From Podarcis cretensis (Eukaryota), in the NCBI GenBank assembly GCA_951804945.1, contig OX638152.1:12524001-12588000 (forward strand): DNA of 64,000 bases. Reading direction: 5' to 3'. Shown here one piece after another: positions 14,054 through 58,380 of this stretch. The translations under genes and the position numbers were made by a program. A model generated the notes under the pieces. The model did no database searches, had not been told where the DNA came from, and was given only the letters and a program-made list of their open reading frames with translations. The first letter of the stretch is position 1. Each line of letters opens with the position of its first letter.

Positions 14054-15146
14054 GTAAGTCCACTCCAGAGCACTGATAAATTTGGACTATCATCTAGCAC
14101 AGCACAAATAGGAAAGCTGTGGCCCTCCGAATGTTGGGCTTCAACTCCCATAAAATCCAGCCATCATAGCTAGTGATCACAGATTATGGGAGTTGTAGTC
14201 TAATAACACCTGGGGAGTCACAGTTCAAAAAGTGTGCAATGAATTCTCTAGGCCTGGGGTCAGTTTGAAACAACATTGTTTCCCCACTTGCATGACATTT
14301 GGGGCTATATGGCAATGGGTAATTTGCATACAAAATTCACATGAACTTTTATTATTGATTGATTGATTCATTGATTGAATTTATATACCATCCTATACCC
14401 GGAGGTCTCAGTCTGCTTGTCATGTGACTGAGGCTTGCTTTGCTGTAGTGGAGACCAGACCATGGCATTACAGAAGTACAAGACTTCCATCAGCAATTTA
14501 AGCATTATGCACTATGAGGCTAACACCATGTAGTGATAGTTTATCATTTTAAGACATTTATTTATCTGAGATAAATTTATCTGGCCATGTTAAGTAAATG
14601 GCAGTTTGTGGGCATTCTCTAAAGTTGGATGGGCATTCTCAGCTGGGAGCTACATTCCAGCCATACAAAAGCCAGAGATGTTCCTTTAAGTGGCCACACG
14701 CACAACCTTCAAGCAGGCAAGTAAGAGGACTTGTCACAGTTCAAGGACACCTTCCAGACAGGCAAAGCATCCAAGGACATGGAGCAAGGTCAGTGGGGGA
14801 GTGTGGCCTTGAGAGAGTAGAATAGAGAAAGTCCTAAGGGCCAGATAGCAGGGCCTCATTTGATCCTCAGGCTTGGAAGTTTGTCACATGGGGCAGCAGA
14901 AGGCAAATGCCATAGTTCAGTGTTTCCCAACCTTTTTTGGGCAAAGGCACACTTGTTTCATGAAAAAAATCTCGAGGCACACCACCATTAGAAAATGTTT
15001 AAAAAATTAACTCTGTGCCTATATTGACTATATATAAAGTAACTCTCTTTAATAGGAATCAAATAAACACAAAGAAAGTATTTTATAATTACTTTATTAT
15101 GAAATAGTAAGTAAACAGAAATATGAAAAATTATAAAATACTTTAT

Positions 15147-15851
15147 TCAGTGCGCAACCTGGGCCTGTTTGGCTGAACACAAAGCTGATATTCTGGCTGG
15201 AATCGAAGAAAGACACACACGTAGCTCTTCGTCAACAGCTCTCAGTCTCTCTCTGTATTTAGTTTTTATAGCAATCATGCTTGAAAAGCTCAACTCACAG
15301 AGATATGTAGTGGAAAATGGGAGCAATGTCAAAATAGCTTTGTTTGCCAGAAGGGGGAACTCCTTGGCAGTTTCCAACCAAAAACTGTCCAAAGGTAGAT
15401 CAGCAAATCTTAGCTTGAAACCACGATTTTGTCTCAGTTCAGTTAGTTCCTCCTGCTCCTGTAAAGTCATGTCCTTTCCACCAACTGATGCTGAGCTATA
15501 AGGGTCCCTAACCCAGTCAAGGCATTCAGTGGAGACTGAAGAGAAATAAAATGACAACTTCCCCTCGAGAGTTTTTAAATGTTTACCTATTATCTCACAC
15601 AGTGCAGCAGTGTGAACACCTTGCCATTGCTTGGTGAGTGTGAACATTTCAAGATTGCCACTTTCCACGTGTTGATGCCAGAGTTGCACCTTTGAACGGA
15701 ATCCATTTATTTTATCTGTACTTGTAAGCAGGTTTTCATTTCGGCCTTGCATTCGTGTGTTCAGTTCATTCAGATGATGAAATATATCTGCCAGGTATGC
15801 CAGCCTTGCACACCACTCATCACTTGCAAGCAGCTTTGCGTAATCTGACCT
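15147..15851 (-). pseudogene. Buster transposase, C-terminal part (catalytic Glu and hAT dimerisation region)
   Basis: [20 protein letters not shown]...WVRDPY...FW...[17 protein letters not shown]...K.R.RL; in frame with 18337-19512 after removing the L1 insert. Confidence 0.93.
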
Positions 15852-16215
15852 CTCATTTGTCAGAAACACTTTATTTATTTTTTAAATGATATTTATTAAG
15901 TTTCACAAAATATAACAAACTTCGAAACAACAAACAACAAACATCAAAAATACAAACAATATCAAAAATCATAAGAAAAAAAAACATGGAAAAGATTCAA
16001 CATAATAATAAAAGAAAAATTAAAAGAAAACTCTGGTTCATTCTAATAGTCTTCAAAACCTTATTTTCCTTGCTTCCTCCCGCCTTCCCTTCTTGTATTC
16101 CACTTTAAAAGTTTTTTCAGCAAGCTCATTCATATTCGTTTTCATCCTTTATCTTTCCCTTTATACTCTTCCTTATCCTAATCACTAGAACCCCAACATT
16201 TCATTTACACTGCCC

Positions 16216-16671
16216 TTAGCACTCATAGATTTTACAATGATTTTGTAGATAAACTTTAAACTTCTTCCAATCTTCTTCCACCAACTCTTCTCCTTGATCT
16301 CGGATTCTGCCGGTCATTTCTGCCAATTCCATATAGTCTATTACTTGTATCTGCCATTCTTCCAGGGTGGGTAGGTCTTGTGTCTTCCAGTGTTTTGCGA
16401 TGAGTATTCTTGCTGCTGCAGTAGCATACATAAAAAAGGTTCTATCCTTCTTTAATACCAATTGGCCGACCATGCCCAGGAGAAAGGCCTCTGGTTTCTT
16501 TAGGAAAGTATATTTAAATACCTTTTTCATTTCATTATAAATCATCTCCCAGAAAGCCTTGATCCTTGGGCACGTCCACCAAAGGTGAAAGAATATACCT
16601 TCAATCTCTTTACATTTCCAGCATTTATTATCGGGCAAATGATAGATTTTTGCAAGCTTGACTGGGGTCAT
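16216..16671 (-). CDS. L1 ORF2 C-terminal Cys-rich segment (151-aa open frame)
   Basis: (RWY)MTPVKLAKIY...CWKC...FFHLWWTC..IKAFW...AAARILIAKHWK...W: the CCHC-type motif of non-mammalian L1 ORF2. Confidence 0.8.
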   Translation of the reverse strand: MTPVKLAKIYHLPDNKCWKCKEIEGIFFHLWWTCPRIKAFWEMIYNEMKKVFKYTFLKKPEAFLLGMVGQLVLKKDRTFFMYATAAARILIAKHWKTQDLPTLEEWQIQVIDYMELAEMTGRIRDQGEELVEEDWKKFKVYLQNHCKIYEC

Positions 16672-16678
16672 GTACCAC

Positions 16679-17383
16679 CTAATGTAAGCTCAATATTTTG
16701 TCTCTTTCTTCTTTTGATCTTAACGAAATCAAGCAGTCCCTCGCCTTGTTCTTCCTTCTAACCCTTCCCAGTTGGAAGGCACTCACTATCTTAATTTCTT
16801 CAGGGTCCAGACCCCAGAAAGTCTCAAACTCCAGTGTGAGGAACTCTATTAATTCTCCTTCCTCTGTTTCCGGAACTGCTCTTATTCTCAAGTTGGCCTG
16901 CTTTTCCTTAAGTTCAATCAAAGAGAATTGTGCCTTGTAGTCATCCAATCTTCTATTAATTGGCGGTATTTTTTCCTCTACCGCCAAGATCCTCTCTTTC
17001 GCTTCCTCTGCTGTCTGTTTTGTCTCCTTGGATTCCTGCAGTAGCCTATCAATTGCCTGGGTATTGGAGTTCACTTTCTGCCCCACATCATTCACCTTTT
17101 GTCCAAGGTCTTTAATAGTTGAAGTGTTTAAGTCTATCTTGGTTGACAAATTTTGTAGAGCTGAGAGAATCTTATCCAATGTTGCAGAGTCTGATCCTAC
17201 TGGTCCTGCTCCTTTGGCTTCTTCTCTTTCTGTAACTTGTGGGACAGAAAGGCCTGTTAAAGATGGTCTTCTGTAGTGTTGTTGTTGCTGTGTCAGCAAT
17301 TGCTGCTGTTGTCTGGTTTTATATTTTATAACTTTCTCTTGCGCCTTCTCCTGAGCATTATCTTGTGGTTTGTCTTGATCCAT
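16679..17383 (-). CDS. L1 ORF1p, C-terminally truncated (coiled coil plus start of RRM), 234 aa
   Basis: Heptad-rich coiled coil followed by EKQANLRIRAVPETEE, matching the L1 ORF1 'NLRI.G.PE' RRM entry motif; ends at a TAG at the deletion junction. Confidence 0.82.
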   Translation of the reverse strand: MDQDKPQDNAQEKAQEKVIKYKTRQQQQLLTQQQQHYRRPSLTGLSVPQVTEREEAKGAGPVGSDSATLDKILSALQNLSTKIDLNTSTIKDLGQKVNDVGQKVNSNTQAIDRLLQESKETKQTAEEAKERILAVEEKIPPINRRLDDYKAQFSLIELKEKQANLRIRAVPETEEGELIEFLTLEFETFWGLDPEEIKIVSAFQLGRVRRKNKARDCLISLRSKEERDKILSLH

Positions 17384-18336
17384 TCCTACGGCTCAAGAAG
17401 TCAAGGTCACTTACACAGTTCTCACAGCTCCCAGGATTGTTCTCAGCAATAGTAAAAAGGCAGCTGCAGTGGAAAATTCCCAGCTATAACACAAGATACC
17501 TCTGGGGGAGCAGAGTAGCAAAATGTTTCATGGATGACAACTATAGAACAATGTCTTCGTAAATATAATAGTGTTACACAGATAGCAACAGTTACAAGCT
17601 CAGATAGTCCCAAAATGTTACCAATCTTTTGCAGAGGTCTGCTGTAATAGTTACAATGTCTATAAAACGGTGCATTCGAAGTGACCTTTCAATTACTTAA
17701 GGCAGACCGAAGTCAAGGATTAAGTGGTAGATTCAATCCCCCCCTTTCCCTTTTTTTGGGGGGGTTCTTCTGTCAGGCAGTGAGATTTAGCTCTTTATAA
17801 AATTTCAAATTCTGTGGTTCCCAGCTCCGATGTCCCTTGCTTTAAGCTGTCTACAAGTCGGCAAAGCAGGCTTCCTGTTTAAACTTTACCGATTTCAGAT
17901 TCAAATTCAAGATCAAAGTCCCAGGATCAAAGTGTCAAAGTCAAAGTCAAATTACTGGTTCGCTTATTTTAAGTCCTTTCCTTTGATCCTTTCAAAGTTT
18001 CCCCAGTCTTACTCACGGGTAGATGTTTCAATTCGATGTTCACAGGAAAAAGGTCAGCGCTCTCCGGCAACTGCTATGCAGCTTCACTCCGTAGAAGTAG
18101 CGATCGACTCCCAGCACAGCGCAACCCCGCTCCGCTCCGGAGCTCTTTACAGAGCTCCTTTGACAGTTCGGGGTGCGCTCCGTGTGCCCACTGAGCCCCA
18201 CGGCCTCAGGCTTCTCCCGCCTGCAGGTTTTTTAAGGGTCCCCCGCTTCGCTGCAGCGGTGGACCCGATTTCTACGGAGCTTCTCCCTCCGGTTAGAGGG
18301 AATCCGCCATTGCCGATAGGCGCCGCCTCCGGAAGC

Positions 18337-19512
18337 CTCATTTGTCAGAAACACTTTAAGTTCCTCCCGCAGCTCATACACACGAACCAAGACCTTGCCA
18401 CGCGACAACCACCGGACCTCCGTATGAAACAGCAAGGTTTTATGCTTCGCTCCCATCTCCTCACACAAAGCTGCAAATATGCGACTTTTCACGGGTCGTG
18501 ACTTTACAAAGTTTACCATGCGCACAACATCATTCAACACATGAACTAGGTCTGCTGGTAAAGTCTTGGCTACGAGGGCCTCACGGTGCAAAAAACAATG
18601 CGTAACAATCACATCTGGATTTCTTTCCTTCACTCTGCTTACAAAGCCTTTGGTGTGCCCGACCATGGCTGCAGCTCCATCGGTGCAGACACTTGTGCAG
18701 TTTTCCCACTTAAGCCCTCCTTGTTCAAGGTATTCTGATGTGACCCGAAAAATTTCTTCTCCTGTTGCTTTTTCTGGCAATGCCTTGCAGAAAAAGAAGT
18801 TTTCTCTAATTGCATCACCATCAACAAAACGCACATTGGCCAAGAGTTGAGCATGTCCACTGATATCAGTAGACTCGTCAAGTTGTAATGCAAATTTCTC
18901 ACTGCTATGGATCTTTTCCAAAACCACACTTTCAATGTCTGCAGACATGTCATTAATACGTCTGGAAATTGTGTTGTTTGAGAGAGGGACTTTGGCTATT
19001 TCCTTAGCTGCTTCAGGTCCGAGCATCTCCTCTACAATAGCTTTGCAGGCGGGAAGTATTAATGTCTCTGCCACAGTGTGCGACTTTTTTGACTTGGCTA
19101 TAAGTTCAGCAACGTGATAGCTAGCTTTAAGACCTCTTTCATTTACCTTTGAGGTTTGTCTCATGAAAGTTGCCTGTTTCTCCGTGTTTTCACGCAGGCG
19201 AACAAAATAGTCCGCATTCTTGTTTTGAAGCGAAGGGTGTTTCGTTTGGAGATGGCGTTTAAGTTTGCTTGGGACCATAGCACTGTTAGCTAGCTTTTCA
19301 CCACACACCACGCACAGTGGAGTTGGTTGGTTTGCATCTCCGGTGAAAGTAAATCCAAATGAAATATAGCTTTCGCTATATTGCCTTGTGCCAGAGAATT
19401 TGCTTGAGCTAACCATCTTTGCTTTCTTTTCATGCCCACTCATACTTGGGCTCTCATCTGGCTCCAAATTTTGTTCAGAGTCCAGTTCTTTTCTTTTCAA
19501 AAACTTTTCCAT
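18337..19512 (-). pseudogene. Buster transposase, N-terminal part (BED zinc finger, first two catalytic Asp, CxxH, RW)
   Basis: ATG at 19512 (MEKFLKRK); CVVC...RHLQTKH BED finger; [10 protein letters not shown]; VCTDGAAAM; HCFLHREAL; TEVRWLSRG. Confidence 0.95.
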
Positions 19513-21532
19513 CACTGCAGTATCCGGCCATCCAATTGCCACTGACAAACGGATACAGACCCCTTTTTCTTACAGCACAGCTCGCACAAATTTACACGCA
19601 ACACCCTTTTCGAATTAAAACACACAGTCTCACGAGAGCAAGGAGCAGCGATTTTATATTTTACGAAAAGAAGTCGCCAGAATCATACCACACATGGTGC
19701 CATCTGCGTGGAAAAAAAAAGCTTCCGTGTGTGTGCATTCCCTGTGGCCACTGTATCATTTAAACCTACATGCACTCATGCCAGAGCAGGTGTCTTGAAT
19801 CCCCAGAGCACTAATACTGCACATGTCGGCGAGGATACACCACAGCTGCTTTTCTCTTTAAACCATACTATAATCAGAGTAAACGACCCCTAGCAAACCC
19901 TGCTGAGGGTTTGCAGTTTGCACAGTCCGAGCTCACGCGTGTTCCCTGCAACTCCGCCTGCCTCCAACGGGACGTGCTCCCAAGTAAGCGCGTTTAGCAC
20001 TGCGGTGCTCGTTTGCCTGGTGATTTGCAATGGTCGGTGCTGGGCGATATTGTGCCCCGCTGGGCTTGTTTACGGAGCTCGGGCCTCCTCATGGAGTTGC
20101 TGGCTAAGTGACGGGTCTCCTGAACTTCTCAGGTATCCCGGTTCCCCAGAGGGCATAATGATCGCTGCCACGCGGGGTAACGTTACAAGGGCAAACTCCC
20201 GCTCTCGGGAGCCGAGGGCAGCAATTCCACGTGGCTGGAAAGAAAATGCGTGGAGCGCCTGCACGCCGGGAAGGGGCAAGATTCGGCTCCGTAGCAACCG
20301 GGAAAGGTGCAAAGCGTGTGGCACGTTTCAACTACCGGCTCCGGGCTCCCTCGGCCCCAAGCGGGAGGGGGGCGCCGAAAGAACCCGCCGCCTTTTTCCT
20401 GCTCCCGCGGCGAGGCTTTGCACTTTCTTTCCGGTTCTCTCCCCTGCGCCGTTTCCTAAATTTTCCTCTCGCCCAAGTCCTGCCAACTGCGAAAGTCAAC
20501 TGCCAACTGCGAAGAACCGTAGGACTGGGGGGTGGGTGGGTTGGAGAGAGAGCGCCGCGCAAGAGACGCTCCTCCTCCCTCTTCTTGCCCCCCTTCCTTC
20601 TCCCCCCCTCTTTTTTTCTTTCTTTCTTGCTGCGTCTGTTTGTACTTTAGCTCGCCCGCCTCCCTCCCATGGCACACCAGGCAACGTCTCGCGGCACACT
20701 AGTGTGCCGCGGAACACCGGTTGGGAAACACTGCCATAGTTTAAACTGCAGTGAAAAACTTGAGTATTTGGAACTGCAGTTGAAAGATTCGCCACACGGG
20801 GGAGCTGTATGGTTCAGCAGTATGTGATAAGTGAAGCCTAGTCCAGAAAAGCTTCTGCTTTAATAAATCTGTTAACATTTACACTCTAAAGTATGTCAAC
20901 ATCATTTCCAGTAATCTGTAATTCCTCTAACACAAAATAGATTAATTATCATTTTCCAATTGTTCACCGAGTAGCCCACCTTTCATTGTGATGCATTGCC
21001 AGGTTTAATTCCCCCTTTAGGGCTTAACCTGAAGCAGGGCATAGTTCTGGCCTCTAAAGGGTCAACTCTCTCTTTTAGAACATACAAAATGACAAAGAGT
21101 GCACAAAGAGTATATAACTGCAACCAGTTCTGTCCCCCAGGAGGTCACAGAGTGAGTCTCCCATACAGGATTGTTTCCCACCGCTTCTCACTTATGAAAT
21201 TAAATTGTCTGTTGCAGATGGGGACTGCCTTTTCCTAACCAGCTCTGTGAGTTCAAATCTGAGCTGAGGTTTGAATCCTCCGCTCAGAACCTGTGAAAGC
21301 AGGTTGCTTATGCCATTTTCATTCATTTTTTCCTAAGGCAACAATCCCAAGTACACTTCCTAGGAAGTAAATCTAATGGGACTCAGTGGAACTTGCTTCC
21401 AAGCAAATATGCAAAGGATTGTGCTGTTAGATTATTAAGATGACAGGTGATTAAAGACTTAGGTTGGGAAGCTGGTATGCACCTGCAATATTTGTCAGCT
21501 TCCAGTAGCTTTTTCATCTGGTCTTTTAACAG

Positions 21533-57984: not shown

Positions 57985-58380
57985 TTTTTAAAATATATAT
58001 ATTTTTATTAGGAATTTCAACATAAGAATTTATCAGAAATACATCCTCCTCCTCTTCCCCCCTCCCCAAAGAAAGAAAAGCCCACAACCCCCCCCCCAGA
58101 CGTCCCTCAGCTCCTCTTTCTGATTTCTCAACACAGATTGTTCTCTGCATATTATAAAAATGTATAAATCCTTGATTTATCTATCTATATATTGCCAATA
58201 AAGAAAAAATTGTGAATGTTTATTCAAAACCTGCCAAGGAGTCCAGTTCATTTTGTTGTTTCTTTAAATACTTTGTAAAAGGTTCCCATTCTTCTTTGAA
58301 GTCACAGTTGTCCTTGTCACGTGGTTTGTGTGTCAGTTTCGTGAATTCCGCATAGTCCATCAGTTTCTCTTGCCACAGTT
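57985..58380 (-). mobile_element. 5'-truncated L1 (ORF2 C-terminus plus 3'UTR)
   Basis: Minus strand WQEKLMDYAEFTKLT...FKEEWEPFTKYL aligns with WQIQVIDYMELAEMT...EEDWKKFKVYL of the L1 at 16.2 kb; degenerate ~15-bp TSD TGC(G/A)GAAACT(G/C)TCTT. Confidence 0.8.

What the first reader, a model, noticed from the sequence alone, without database searches (positions are those of the whole stretch)
15874..18336. Miniature two-ORF L1 derivative: truncated ORF1 joined to the ORF2 Cys domain, with no EN or RT
Seen in sequence: both native L1 ends are present (GC-rich 5' start, ~950-bp 5'UTR, 3'UTR, AATAAA, A-rich tail) with a perfect 21-22 bp TSD at a TT/AAAG site. One junction near 16680 removes the end of ORF1 and the EN and RT regions of ORF2. 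A TAG at the junction closes a 234-aa ORF1 (coiled coil plus partial RRM), and 7 nt later an in-frame ATG opens a 151-aa ORF2 C-terminal CCHC domain. Both frames are stop-free. Established: L1 copies are usually 5'-truncated, ORF2 is translated by re-initiation after ORF1, and ORF1-only 'half-L1' (HAL1) non-autonomous elements exist. Inference: this could be an amplifying non-autonomous family mobilised in trans, whose coiled-coil product might co-trimerise with and interfere with host L1 ORF1p. A one-off deletion is equally possible. This is my best candidate for an undescribed system here.
Basis: partly seen in the sequence, partly recalled or inferred. Interest (0 to 1): 0.8.

Follow-up and report, generated by a model that had tools for sequence, protein, structure and literature searches.

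The report
Internally deleted lizard L1 retrocopy
This is a young lizard L1 jumping element that lost about 3.8 kb from its middle, including its cutting and copying enzyme, and then landed inside a Buster DNA transposon; it belongs to a known class of defective LINE derivative, and nothing here shows that it has multiplied as a family.

Summary
Window 15874-18336 (minus strand) is an L1 with both native ends and a perfect 22-bp target-site duplication. It is inserted in a Buster/hAT transposase ORF. Contigs from two other lizard organisms carry the uninterrupted Buster sequence.

A single junction at 16680|16679 joins ORF1 codon 234 to the last ~160 codons of ORF2, the equivalent of human ORF2p from about residue 1110. 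EN and RT are absent.

The two-ORF design looks incidental:
- The TAG is assembled by the junction itself.
- The ATG aligns with human ORF2p L1114, inside a stretch conserved in related ORF2 tails.
- Both frames are open because the copy is young.

I could not test whether the junction recurs elsewhere, because no tool reaches the source genome. I found no junction-bearing contig or protein. In one run the only contig next to the junction is parental type.

Internal-deletion ('bipartite') non-autonomous LINEs that keep ORF1 are already described (HAL1, HeT-A, Ag-Sponge). A Podarcis lilfordi protein (CAI5795896.1) is another ORF1-head/ORF2-tail fusion. This scan has also flagged many half-L1-like derivatives elsewhere in this genome, with other junctions.

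Verdict: a new member of a known kind, of modest interest. The family and interference ideas remain untested.

The parts
18337..18358 (-). 5' copy of the 22-bp target-site duplication (part of the Buster transposase ORF)
   Evidence: identical to 15852-15873; joint 15851->18337 with 22 letters fitting both sides.
17384..18336 (-). L1 5'UTR, 953 nt, with a CpG-rich first 300 nt and a native 5' terminus GCTTCCGGAGG...ATGGCG
   Evidence: It matches the lizard clade-1 5' terminus consensus and length range (792-1465 nt) in PMC5381506.
16679..17383 (-). Truncated ORF1 (234 aa plus TAG): N-terminal region, long coiled coil, and the first ~70 residues of the RRM. The end of the RRM and the CTD are missing.
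   Evidence: P0001 (356 aa), 78% identity, E 1.3e-98; P0003 is named 'L1 transposable element RRM domain-containing protein'; the alignment ends at ...ILSLH where homologues continue H[YF]QK...; model with helix 64-138 followed by a beta-alpha-beta unit; weak fold matches to human ORF1p RRM entries 2ldy and 2w7a.
16679..16680 (-). Deletion junction: the last ORF1-derived base is 16680 and the first ORF2-derived base is 16679
   Evidence: record 17 (X6): a 381-nt contig matches 17002-16680 and then runs on for 58 unlike letters, so it is a parental ORF1; the frames agree.
16216..16671 (-). 151-aa ORF, the C-terminal Cys (CCHC) segment of ORF2. ORF2-derived sequence starts at 16679.
   Evidence: human ORF2p 1114-1222, E 2.6e-6. 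Podarcis/Logan ORF2 tails at 53-88% identity, with native context YRWH[LI]TPVKLAK.
15884..16215 (-). T-rich 3'UTR with AATAAA at 15892-15897
   Evidence: Its length and T-rich repeats fit lizard clade-1 L1 3'UTRs (PMC5381506).
15874..15883 (-). Short A-rich tail (AAAAAATAAA)
15852..15873 (-). 3' copy of the 22-bp target-site duplication
15147..19548 (-). Host: a Buster/hAT transposase ORF split by the insertion (halves 19548-18337 and 15873-15147)
Evidence: the two ORF halves read ...KVFLTNE | RSDYAKLL...; contigs in X5 and X6 run straight across the empty site.

Best explanation
This is a recently integrated, internally deleted copy of a lizard clade-1 L1: a 'bipartite' L1 derivative made of 5'UTR, the first two-thirds of ORF1, the last ~160 codons of ORF2, the 3'UTR and a tail.

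About 3.7-3.9 kb is missing: the end of ORF1, any spacer, EN, RT and most of the rest of ORF2. The copy was inserted by L1 endonuclease nicking and target-primed reverse transcription into a Buster transposase gene. It cannot move on its own.

The 'two-ORF' layout is a by-product of where the break fell. TA from an ORF1 codon plus G from ORF2 happen to spell TAG. The next ATG sits at a native ORF2 codon position, the one that aligns with human L1114. Both frames are open simply because the copy is young.

My estimates for the origin of the deletion, all inferred:
- About 45%: a one-off event at the cDNA stage of this insertion (the RT jumped along its own template), or at most a very low-copy source.
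- About 30%: copied from an already deleted source element, using ORF2p from a full-length L1 in trans, that is, a small family.
- About 20%: a genomic deletion after a full-length copy had inserted.
For: - Anatomy and TSD.
- Empty site, with the 22-nt sequence present once, in contigs of two other organisms.
- A parental-type contig that diverges exactly at 16680: record 17.
- ORF1 homology and truncation point.
- ORF2 C-terminal homology.
- The 5' terminus, UTR lengths and T-rich 3'UTR fit published lizard clade-1 L1.
- Relatives at 95-99% identity are present in contigs from the four runs laid, one each from four of the ten organisms that hold parts of the element, so the source lineage is young and widespread.
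- 10 of the 13 best-supported ORF1 variants among those relatives are synonymous. The ORF1-bearing lineage evolves under constraint, as active L1s do.
- Internal-deletion LINE derivatives are a documented category: PMC5786205.
Against: - Nothing contradicts the structural reading.
- The split between one-off, small family and post-insertion deletion is a judgement, not a measurement. The source genome could not be searched, and read laying printed only 32 of about 33,900 contig pieces.
- Other notes of this scan report abundant half-L1-like families in this genome. That raises the prior that deleted L1s get mobilised here.
Confidence: 0.85

Rival explanations
1. The element belongs to an amplifying non-autonomous L1 family with this exact junction. 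Full-length L1s mobilise it in trans. One or both of its small proteins (truncated ORF1p, free ORF2 Cys domain) contribute to mobilisation or interfere with the helper.
For: - Both native ends, an intact promoter-like 5'UTR, a polyA signal and a perfect TSD make it a competent RNA template.
- It lacks EN and RT, so if the deletion predates integration it must have been mobilised in trans.
- The genus carries other ORF1-head/ORF2-tail derivatives: P0013 = CAI5795896.1.
- Unverified scan notes describe abundant half-L1-like families and other 'ORF1 + ORF2 C-terminal peptide' derivatives in this genome.
Against: - No second junction copy in the window.
- The exact ORFs are absent from 15 billion proteins, and no ORF1 relative of 129-410 aa above 78% identity turned up in the word search.
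- In run X6 the whole depth of the bin beside the junction (52.0) equals that of a single parental-type contig.
- This copy has Gln at an otherwise invariant RRM Arg.
- A cDNA-stage template jump would give the same structure without any family.
Confidence: 0.3
2. A full-length L1 inserted here, and a later genomic deletion (end joining or replication slippage) removed about 3.8 kb in place.
For: The TSD and both ends fit this equally well. At most a few bases of microhomology are possible at the junction.
Against: The insertion is very young: the TSD is 22/22 identical and both coding remnants are unbroken. That leaves little time for a clean 3.8-kb internal deletion. There is no direct evidence either way.
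Confidence: 0.2
3. A spliced L1 mRNA was retrotransposed (SpIRE-like): the missing segment was an intron removed by the spliceosome.
For: Spliced L1 RNAs do get retrotransposed in humans (PMC5860796). On the ORF2 side...TTAG|G resembles a splice acceptor.
Against: All 8 ORF1 homologues continue H-[Y/F]-[Q/R/K/E] after the break. The parental contig stops matching right after CATTA. The deleted segment would therefore begin YCA.., or TAY.. if the break is shifted. No GT donor fits in any register.
Confidence: 0.03
4. Assembly artefact: a full-length L1 was collapsed to 2.46 kb.
For: None specific. L1s are repeat-rich, and I could not lay reads from the source sample.
Against: A collapse needs similar sequence at both breakpoints. 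ORF1 codon 234 and the ORF2 tail share at most a few bases.
Confidence: 0.03

Closest known systems
Bipartite (internal-deletion) non-autonomous LINEs of the ORF1-present type, as categorised by Kojima 2018 (PMC5786205): HAL1 from L1, HeT-A from Jockey, Ag-Sponge from CR1
   Same: It keeps only the 5' and 3' parts of an autonomous LINE, joined by one internal deletion. It retains an ORF1-derived reading frame and depends on the autonomous partner's RT.
   Different: ORF1 is truncated inside the RRM rather than complete. A 151-aa ORF2 C-terminal frame survives as a separate ORF. Family status (multiple copies) is not shown.
Mammalian HAL1 (half-L1; Bao & Jurka 2010, cited in PMC5786205; the paper itself is not held)
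   Same: It is L1-derived, lacks EN and RT, has an ORF1-type coiled-coil protein, and shows L1-type integration hallmarks.
   Different: HAL1 families are mammalian, multi-copy and, as I recall from memory, encode a full ORF1p. This element is a lizard clade-1 L1 derivative with a crippled ORF1 plus an ORF2 tail, and is known from one locus.
Podarcis lilfordi hypothetical protein CAI5795896.1 (P0013, 124 aa)
   Same: It is an L1 derivative in the same genus that joins an ORF1 head to an ORF2 tail with no EN or RT. Residues 1-58 match ORF1 N-termini (54% identity, E 5e-15). Residues 60-124 are 88% identical to the last 65 residues of the ORF here.
   Different: The junction differs (ORF1 ~residue 58 to ORF2's last 65 residues). 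It is an in-frame fusion rather than two ORFs, and its ORF1 head comes from a different L1 lineage.
Human SpIREs (spliced integrated retrotransposed elements, PMC5860796)
   Same: These are L1 copies with native ends, an internal segment missing, and a TSD.
   Different: SpIRE junctions lie at splice donor and acceptor sites. Here no GT donor fits.
Full-length lizard clade-1 L1 (Anolis L1_AC families, PMC5381506)
   Same: The 5' terminus motif, the long CpG-rich 5'UTR, the ORF1 coiled coil and RRM, the ORF2 Cys domain, the T-rich 3'UTR, and AATAAA with an A tail all match.
   Different: It is 2.46 kb instead of about 6.4 kb. EN and RT are absent, and ORF1 is cut.

Membership tests
L1 clade (lizard clade 1) | Conserved 5' terminus (GACTTCCGGTG-N8-ATGGCG) and a long CpG-rich 5'UTR | tested here: met
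   The element starts GCTTCCGGAGG, with ATGGCG 16 nt further on. The 5'UTR is 953 nt, inside the published 792-1465 range, and its first 300 nt are CpG-rich. The match to the consensus is approximate.
L1 clade (lizard clade 1) | ORF1p with coiled coil, RRM and CTD | tested here: inconclusive
   The coiled coil and the first ~70 RRM residues are present and homologous to lizard L1 ORF1p. The end of the RRM and the CTD are absent. The fold match to the human ORF1p RRM is only weak (E 0.5-0.7).
L1 clade (lizard clade 1) | ORF2p with APE-type endonuclease and reverse transcriptase | tested here: not met
   Only the equivalent of human ORF2p ~1110-1275 is present. No other ORF2-like sequence lies in the element.
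L1 clade (lizard clade 1) | ORF2 C-terminal CCHC motif | tested here: met
   C-x2-C-x8-H-x4-C, aligned to human ORF2p 1114-1222, E 2.6e-6.
L1 clade (lizard clade 1) | TPRT hallmarks: TSD, TT/AAAA-like target, polyA signal and A-rich tail | tested here: met
   A 22-bp perfect TSD, a T|TAAAG target, AATAAA, and a 10-nt A-rich tail. The empty site was seen in X5 and X6.
HAL1 / half-L1 | Complete ORF1 retained and ORF2 absent | tested here: not met
   ORF1 is truncated at residue 234 of about 356. An ORF2 tail of 151 codons is retained as an open frame.
HAL1 / half-L1 | Multi-copy family sharing one deletion junction | not testable with these tools
The indirect searches were negative.
Bipartite non-autonomous LINE (ORF1-present type) | Only the 5' and 3' parts of an autonomous LINE, joined by an internal deletion | tested here: met
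   A single junction at 16680|16679 between ORF1 codon 234 and the ORF2 tail.
SpIRE | The missing segment is bounded by GT...AG splice sites | tested here: not met
   From homologue codons (H-[Y/F]-Q/K) and the end of the parental contig match, the deleted segment begins YCA.. or TAY... No GT fits in any register. The parental DNA itself was not available, so this is an inference.

The most novel reading that the evidence does not exclude
The element is one member of a still-active, two-ORF non-autonomous L1 lineage in wall lizards. The ORF2 Cys-domain tail is kept as a separately translated protein (re-initiation 7 nt after the ORF1 stop). It helps the RNA capture helper ORF2p or competes with the helper. 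The coiled-coil-only ORF1p co-assembles with helper ORF1p. On this reading it would be a protein-coding parasite of L1 with a different design from HAL1.
Probability: 0.15. Interest if true: 0.55.

Novelty: new member of a known kind. Interest (0 to 1): 0.25.

Why it matters
As a single locus it matters little. It is a clean, datable example of an internally deleted L1 insertion, with a proven empty site and a breakpoint mapped to the base.

Its value lies in context. Podarcis genomes appear to generate many different ORF1-head/ORF2-tail L1 derivatives. If several of them, this junction included, turn out to be multi-copy, the genus would be a natural system for two questions. Which minimal 5' and 3' modules does a non-mammalian L1 need for trans-mobilisation? 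Do truncated ORF1 proteins help or hinder their helpers?

Tried and rejected
- Other copies in the window: blastn and tblastn found none, apart from a weak ORF2-tail fragment at 58262-58375.
I therefore have no parental DNA, no nucleotide-level microhomology test and no dN/dS.
- Junction 30-mer in JGI metagenome contigs: 0 hits. ORF1 profile in the same collection: 600 pattern hits, none confirmed. Neither collection is expected to hold lizard DNA, so these blanks mean little.
- The search of earlier findings by sequence (junction DNA, ORF1): blank.
- PDB sequence search with ORF1 alone and with the ORF1 profile: no L1 ORF1p hit, only coiled coils. Foldseek gave only weak matches to the human ORF1p RRM.
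- The first ORF2-tail word search timed out. The retry with 'region' worked.
- Rfam scan of 15000-19600: nothing.
- PDB search with the Buster N-terminal half: nothing.
- I did not run the large representative-protein search. Neither protein is unexplained, and representatives clustered at 50% identity cannot count copies of a junction.
- The depth figures from Logan contigs were not used as copy numbers, as the tool itself warns.
Full report
**1. What is in the sequence**

Read on the minus strand, window 18336-15874 is bracketed by two identical 22-nt copies of TAAAGTGTTTCTGACAAATGAG, at 18358-18337 and 15873-15852. The next base outward differs between them. The flanks are the two halves of one long hAT/Buster-type transposase ORF, reading ...KVFLTNE | RSDYAKLL....

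Laying Logan contigs of four public runs from four coded organisms gave a joint 15851->18337 ('skips 2485', 22 letters fitting either side). It appeared in a 1359-nt contig of X5 and a 705-nt contig of X6. The uninterrupted target with a single copy of the 22-mer therefore exists. This is the signature of a real insertion with a target-site duplication. Buster is multi-copy, so these contigs may come from paralogous copies rather than the orthologous locus.

**2. Anatomy of the insert**

- The 5'UTR is 953 nt (18336-17384). Its first 300 nt are 58-66% GC and hold 25 of its 36 CpGs. It starts GCTTCCGGAGG...ATGGCG, close to the conserved 5' terminus GACTTCCGGTG-N8-ATGGCG reported for Anolis clade-1 L1. 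The published 5'UTR lengths are 792-1465 nt (PMC5381506). The 5' end is therefore native, not truncated.
- ORF1 (17383-16679) encodes 234 aa. Its closest relative in 5.8 billion protein clusters is a 356-aa Logan protein (P0001, 78% identity, E 1.3e-98). The next hits are Podarcis lilfordi proteins, one of which UniRef names 'L1 transposable element RRM domain-containing protein'.
- In the alignment all eight relatives continue past ...ILSLH with H-[Y/F]-Q/K..., then ...IFKDIPK... and ...FRWEFPQGLSF.... This copy therefore lacks about 120 residues: the end of the RRM and the whole C-terminal domain.
- The AlphaFold model (mean pLDDT 70) shows a 75-residue helix followed by a helix and strand unit. 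Foldseek ranks the human ORF1p RRM entries 2ldy and 2w7a second and fourth, but at non-significant E-values.
- The second ORF (16671-16216, 151 aa) aligns to human ORF2p 1114-1222, including the Cys/His motif (E 2.6e-6).
- The 3'UTR is T-rich, as described for lizard L1. AATAAA lies at 15897-15892 and is followed by a 10-nt A-rich tail.
- Against a clade-1 L1 of about 6.4 kb, roughly 3.7-3.9 kb is missing.

**3. The junction**

A 381-nt contig of X6 matches 17002-16680 with 15 differences and then continues for 58 letters unlike the window (record 17). This is a parental ORF1 running past the breakpoint. It places the last ORF1 base at 16680.

Three points follow from that:

- The stop TAG (16681-16679) is assembled from TA of the parental Tyr/Phe codon plus the first ORF2 base. 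Without it, the ORF1 frame would still have stopped 17 codons later.
- In the ORF2 frame the junction reads I-R-W-Y-M-T-P-V-K-L-A-K. Related ORF2 tails read Y-R-W-H-[L/I]-T-P-V-K-L-A-K, and the Met aligns with human L1114. The Met therefore occupies a native ORF2 position. It is not a start codon created or selected at the junction.
- Whatever the register, the deleted segment cannot begin with GT, because the parental codons after CAT are TAY or TTY followed by CAR/AAR. Canonical splicing of the kind that makes SpIREs (PMC5860796) is therefore very unlikely.

**4. Is it a family?**

This is the crux, and it could not be settled, because no tool reaches the source genome. The indirect evidence is as follows.

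- There is no second copy in the 64-kb window.
- Neither exact protein is among about 15 billion proteins.
- No ORF1 relative of 129-410 aa above 78% identity exists in the clustered set.
- The junction 30-mer and the ORF1 profile are absent from JGI metagenomes. That was expected and means little.
- In run X6 the summed depth of the bin next to the junction (16742-16875: 52.0) equals the depth of the single parental-type contig. In that organism, no junction-type contig is assembled.
- For the other three runs the tool printed only 32 of about 33,900 pieces, so absence cannot be claimed.

On the other side:

- Parts of the element occur at 95-99% identity in contigs of the four runs laid, one from each of four organisms. 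Twenty runs from ten organisms hold at least some of its sampled words. The source lineage is therefore young and widespread.
- Of the 13 best-supported ORF1 differences among those relatives, 10 are synonymous. This is expected for an active L1 lineage, and says nothing about the mini-element as such.
- This copy carries CAA (Gln204) where every contig laid and all eight homologues have Arg, in the SAFRLG motif. That is a CpG-type change at an invariant RRM residue. It is a hint of neutral decay rather than selection.

**5. Context in the genus and the genome**

The ORF2-tail search returned a Podarcis lilfordi 'hypothetical protein', CAI5795896.1 (P0013, 124 aa). Its residues 1-58 match L1 ORF1 N-termini (E 5e-15), and its residues 60-124 are 88% identical to the last 65 residues of the ORF here. 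It is a second, independent ORF1-head/ORF2-tail derivative with a different junction.

A Podarcis muralis UniRef entry (A0A670I4I3) matches the 151-aa ORF exactly over its first 22 residues.

Other notes of this scan describe numerous half-L1-like elements of 1.7-3.1 kb elsewhere in this same genome. Follow-up agents called some of them abundant, and two notes mention a retained ORF2 C-terminal peptide. They are unverified and I could not compare their sequences. They are leads only, but they raise the prior that deleted L1 RNAs are mobilised in this genome.

**6. Mechanism**

Shown: integration by L1-type endonuclease nicking and target-primed reverse transcription (TSD, target motif, tail, empty site), and loss of EN and RT.

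Inferred: the deletion arose in one of three ways.
- During reverse transcription of a full-length RNA, by a template jump. That needs no trans-mobilisation.
- In a source element, which was then copied in trans.
- In place, after insertion.

I put these at roughly 45, 30 and 20%, with splicing and assembly collapse at a few per cent each.

Translation of the 151-aa frame by re-initiation, and interference by a coiled-coil-only ORF1p, are possible in principle but have no support here.

**7. Comparison and novelty**

Non-autonomous LINEs made of only the 5' and 3' parts of an autonomous element, created by internal deletion, are an established category. It has ORF1-absent and ORF1-present types, the latter including HAL1, HeT-A and Ag-Sponge (PMC5786205).

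This element fits the ORF1-present type structurally. It fails the HAL1 definition on ORF1 completeness and on ORF2 absence, and its multi-copy status is unknown. It is a new member of a known kind.

**8. Limits**

- One protein search timed out.
- All runs were Logan contigs, so there are no copy numbers and no RNA evidence.

Noticed in passing
window 17054-17131 (minus strand; ORF1 residues ~85-110), and alignment A1: A profile of nine lizard L1 ORF1 proteins hits the SadA trimeric-autotransporter coiled-coil structures 2wpq, 2wpr and 2wps (E 8.8e-6 to 6.6e-5) through a repeated NTxxI motif. From memory, this is the Asn-at-d polar-layer motif of trimeric coiled coils. Boissinot & Sookdeo (PMC5381506) noted that lizard ORF1p lacks the RhxxhE trimer motif and asked whether it trimerises 'by different means'. 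This may be the answer.
   Followed up: partly
P0013 = CAI5795896.1 (Podarcis lilfordi), found with window 16216-16671: This annotated 124-aa 'hypothetical protein' is an in-frame fusion of an L1 ORF1 N-terminus (residues 1-58) to the last 65 residues of L1 ORF2 (88% identical to the window's). It is another EN/RT-less L1 derivative, with a different junction.
   Followed up: partly
window 16206-16741 versus 15804-16205 and 16742-17947: In all four runs the summed contig depth over the ORF2 tail is roughly 300-7,000 times that over ORF1 and the inner 5'UTR. It is roughly 30-1,500 times that over the element's own 3'UTR, with a sharp step at the ORF2 stop codon. The ORF2-tail coding sequence seems to be shared, at 90% identity or more, by far more copies or subfamilies than the 3'UTR that follows it. 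Ordinary 5' truncation does not predict this.
   Followed up: no
window 17948-18081 (5'UTR): Contig depth peaks locally at about 4-100 times that of neighbouring 5'UTR bins in all four runs. This 5'UTR segment may be shared with other abundant elements.
   Followed up: no
window 16773 (ORF1 codon 204): This copy has CAA (Gln) where every contig in four runs and all eight homologues have Arg (CGA in the contigs), in the invariant SAFRLG motif of the RRM. It is a CpG-type transition.
   Followed up: yes
window 14918-20733: The host is a Buster/hAT transposon whose transposase ORF is otherwise open on both sides of the insertion. Contigs with 0-2 differences occur in the runs from all four organisms laid, so Buster is itself multi-copy and young across these lizards. 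No PDB sequence relative was found for its N-terminal half.
   Followed up: partly
window 58262-58375 (minus strand): A weak ORF2-tail-like fragment: 34% identity over 38 aa to residues 106-143 of the 151-aa ORF, E 4e-4. It is probably an old fragment of another L1 lineage.
   Followed up: no
P0014, P0015 and P0016 (Podarcis lilfordi, P. raffonei, P. muralis gene models): Three annotated host gene models, including 'small integral membrane protein 3 isoform X2', carry L1 ORF2-tail segments. Either the ORF2 tail has been exonised or the annotations are contaminated by L1.
   Followed up: no
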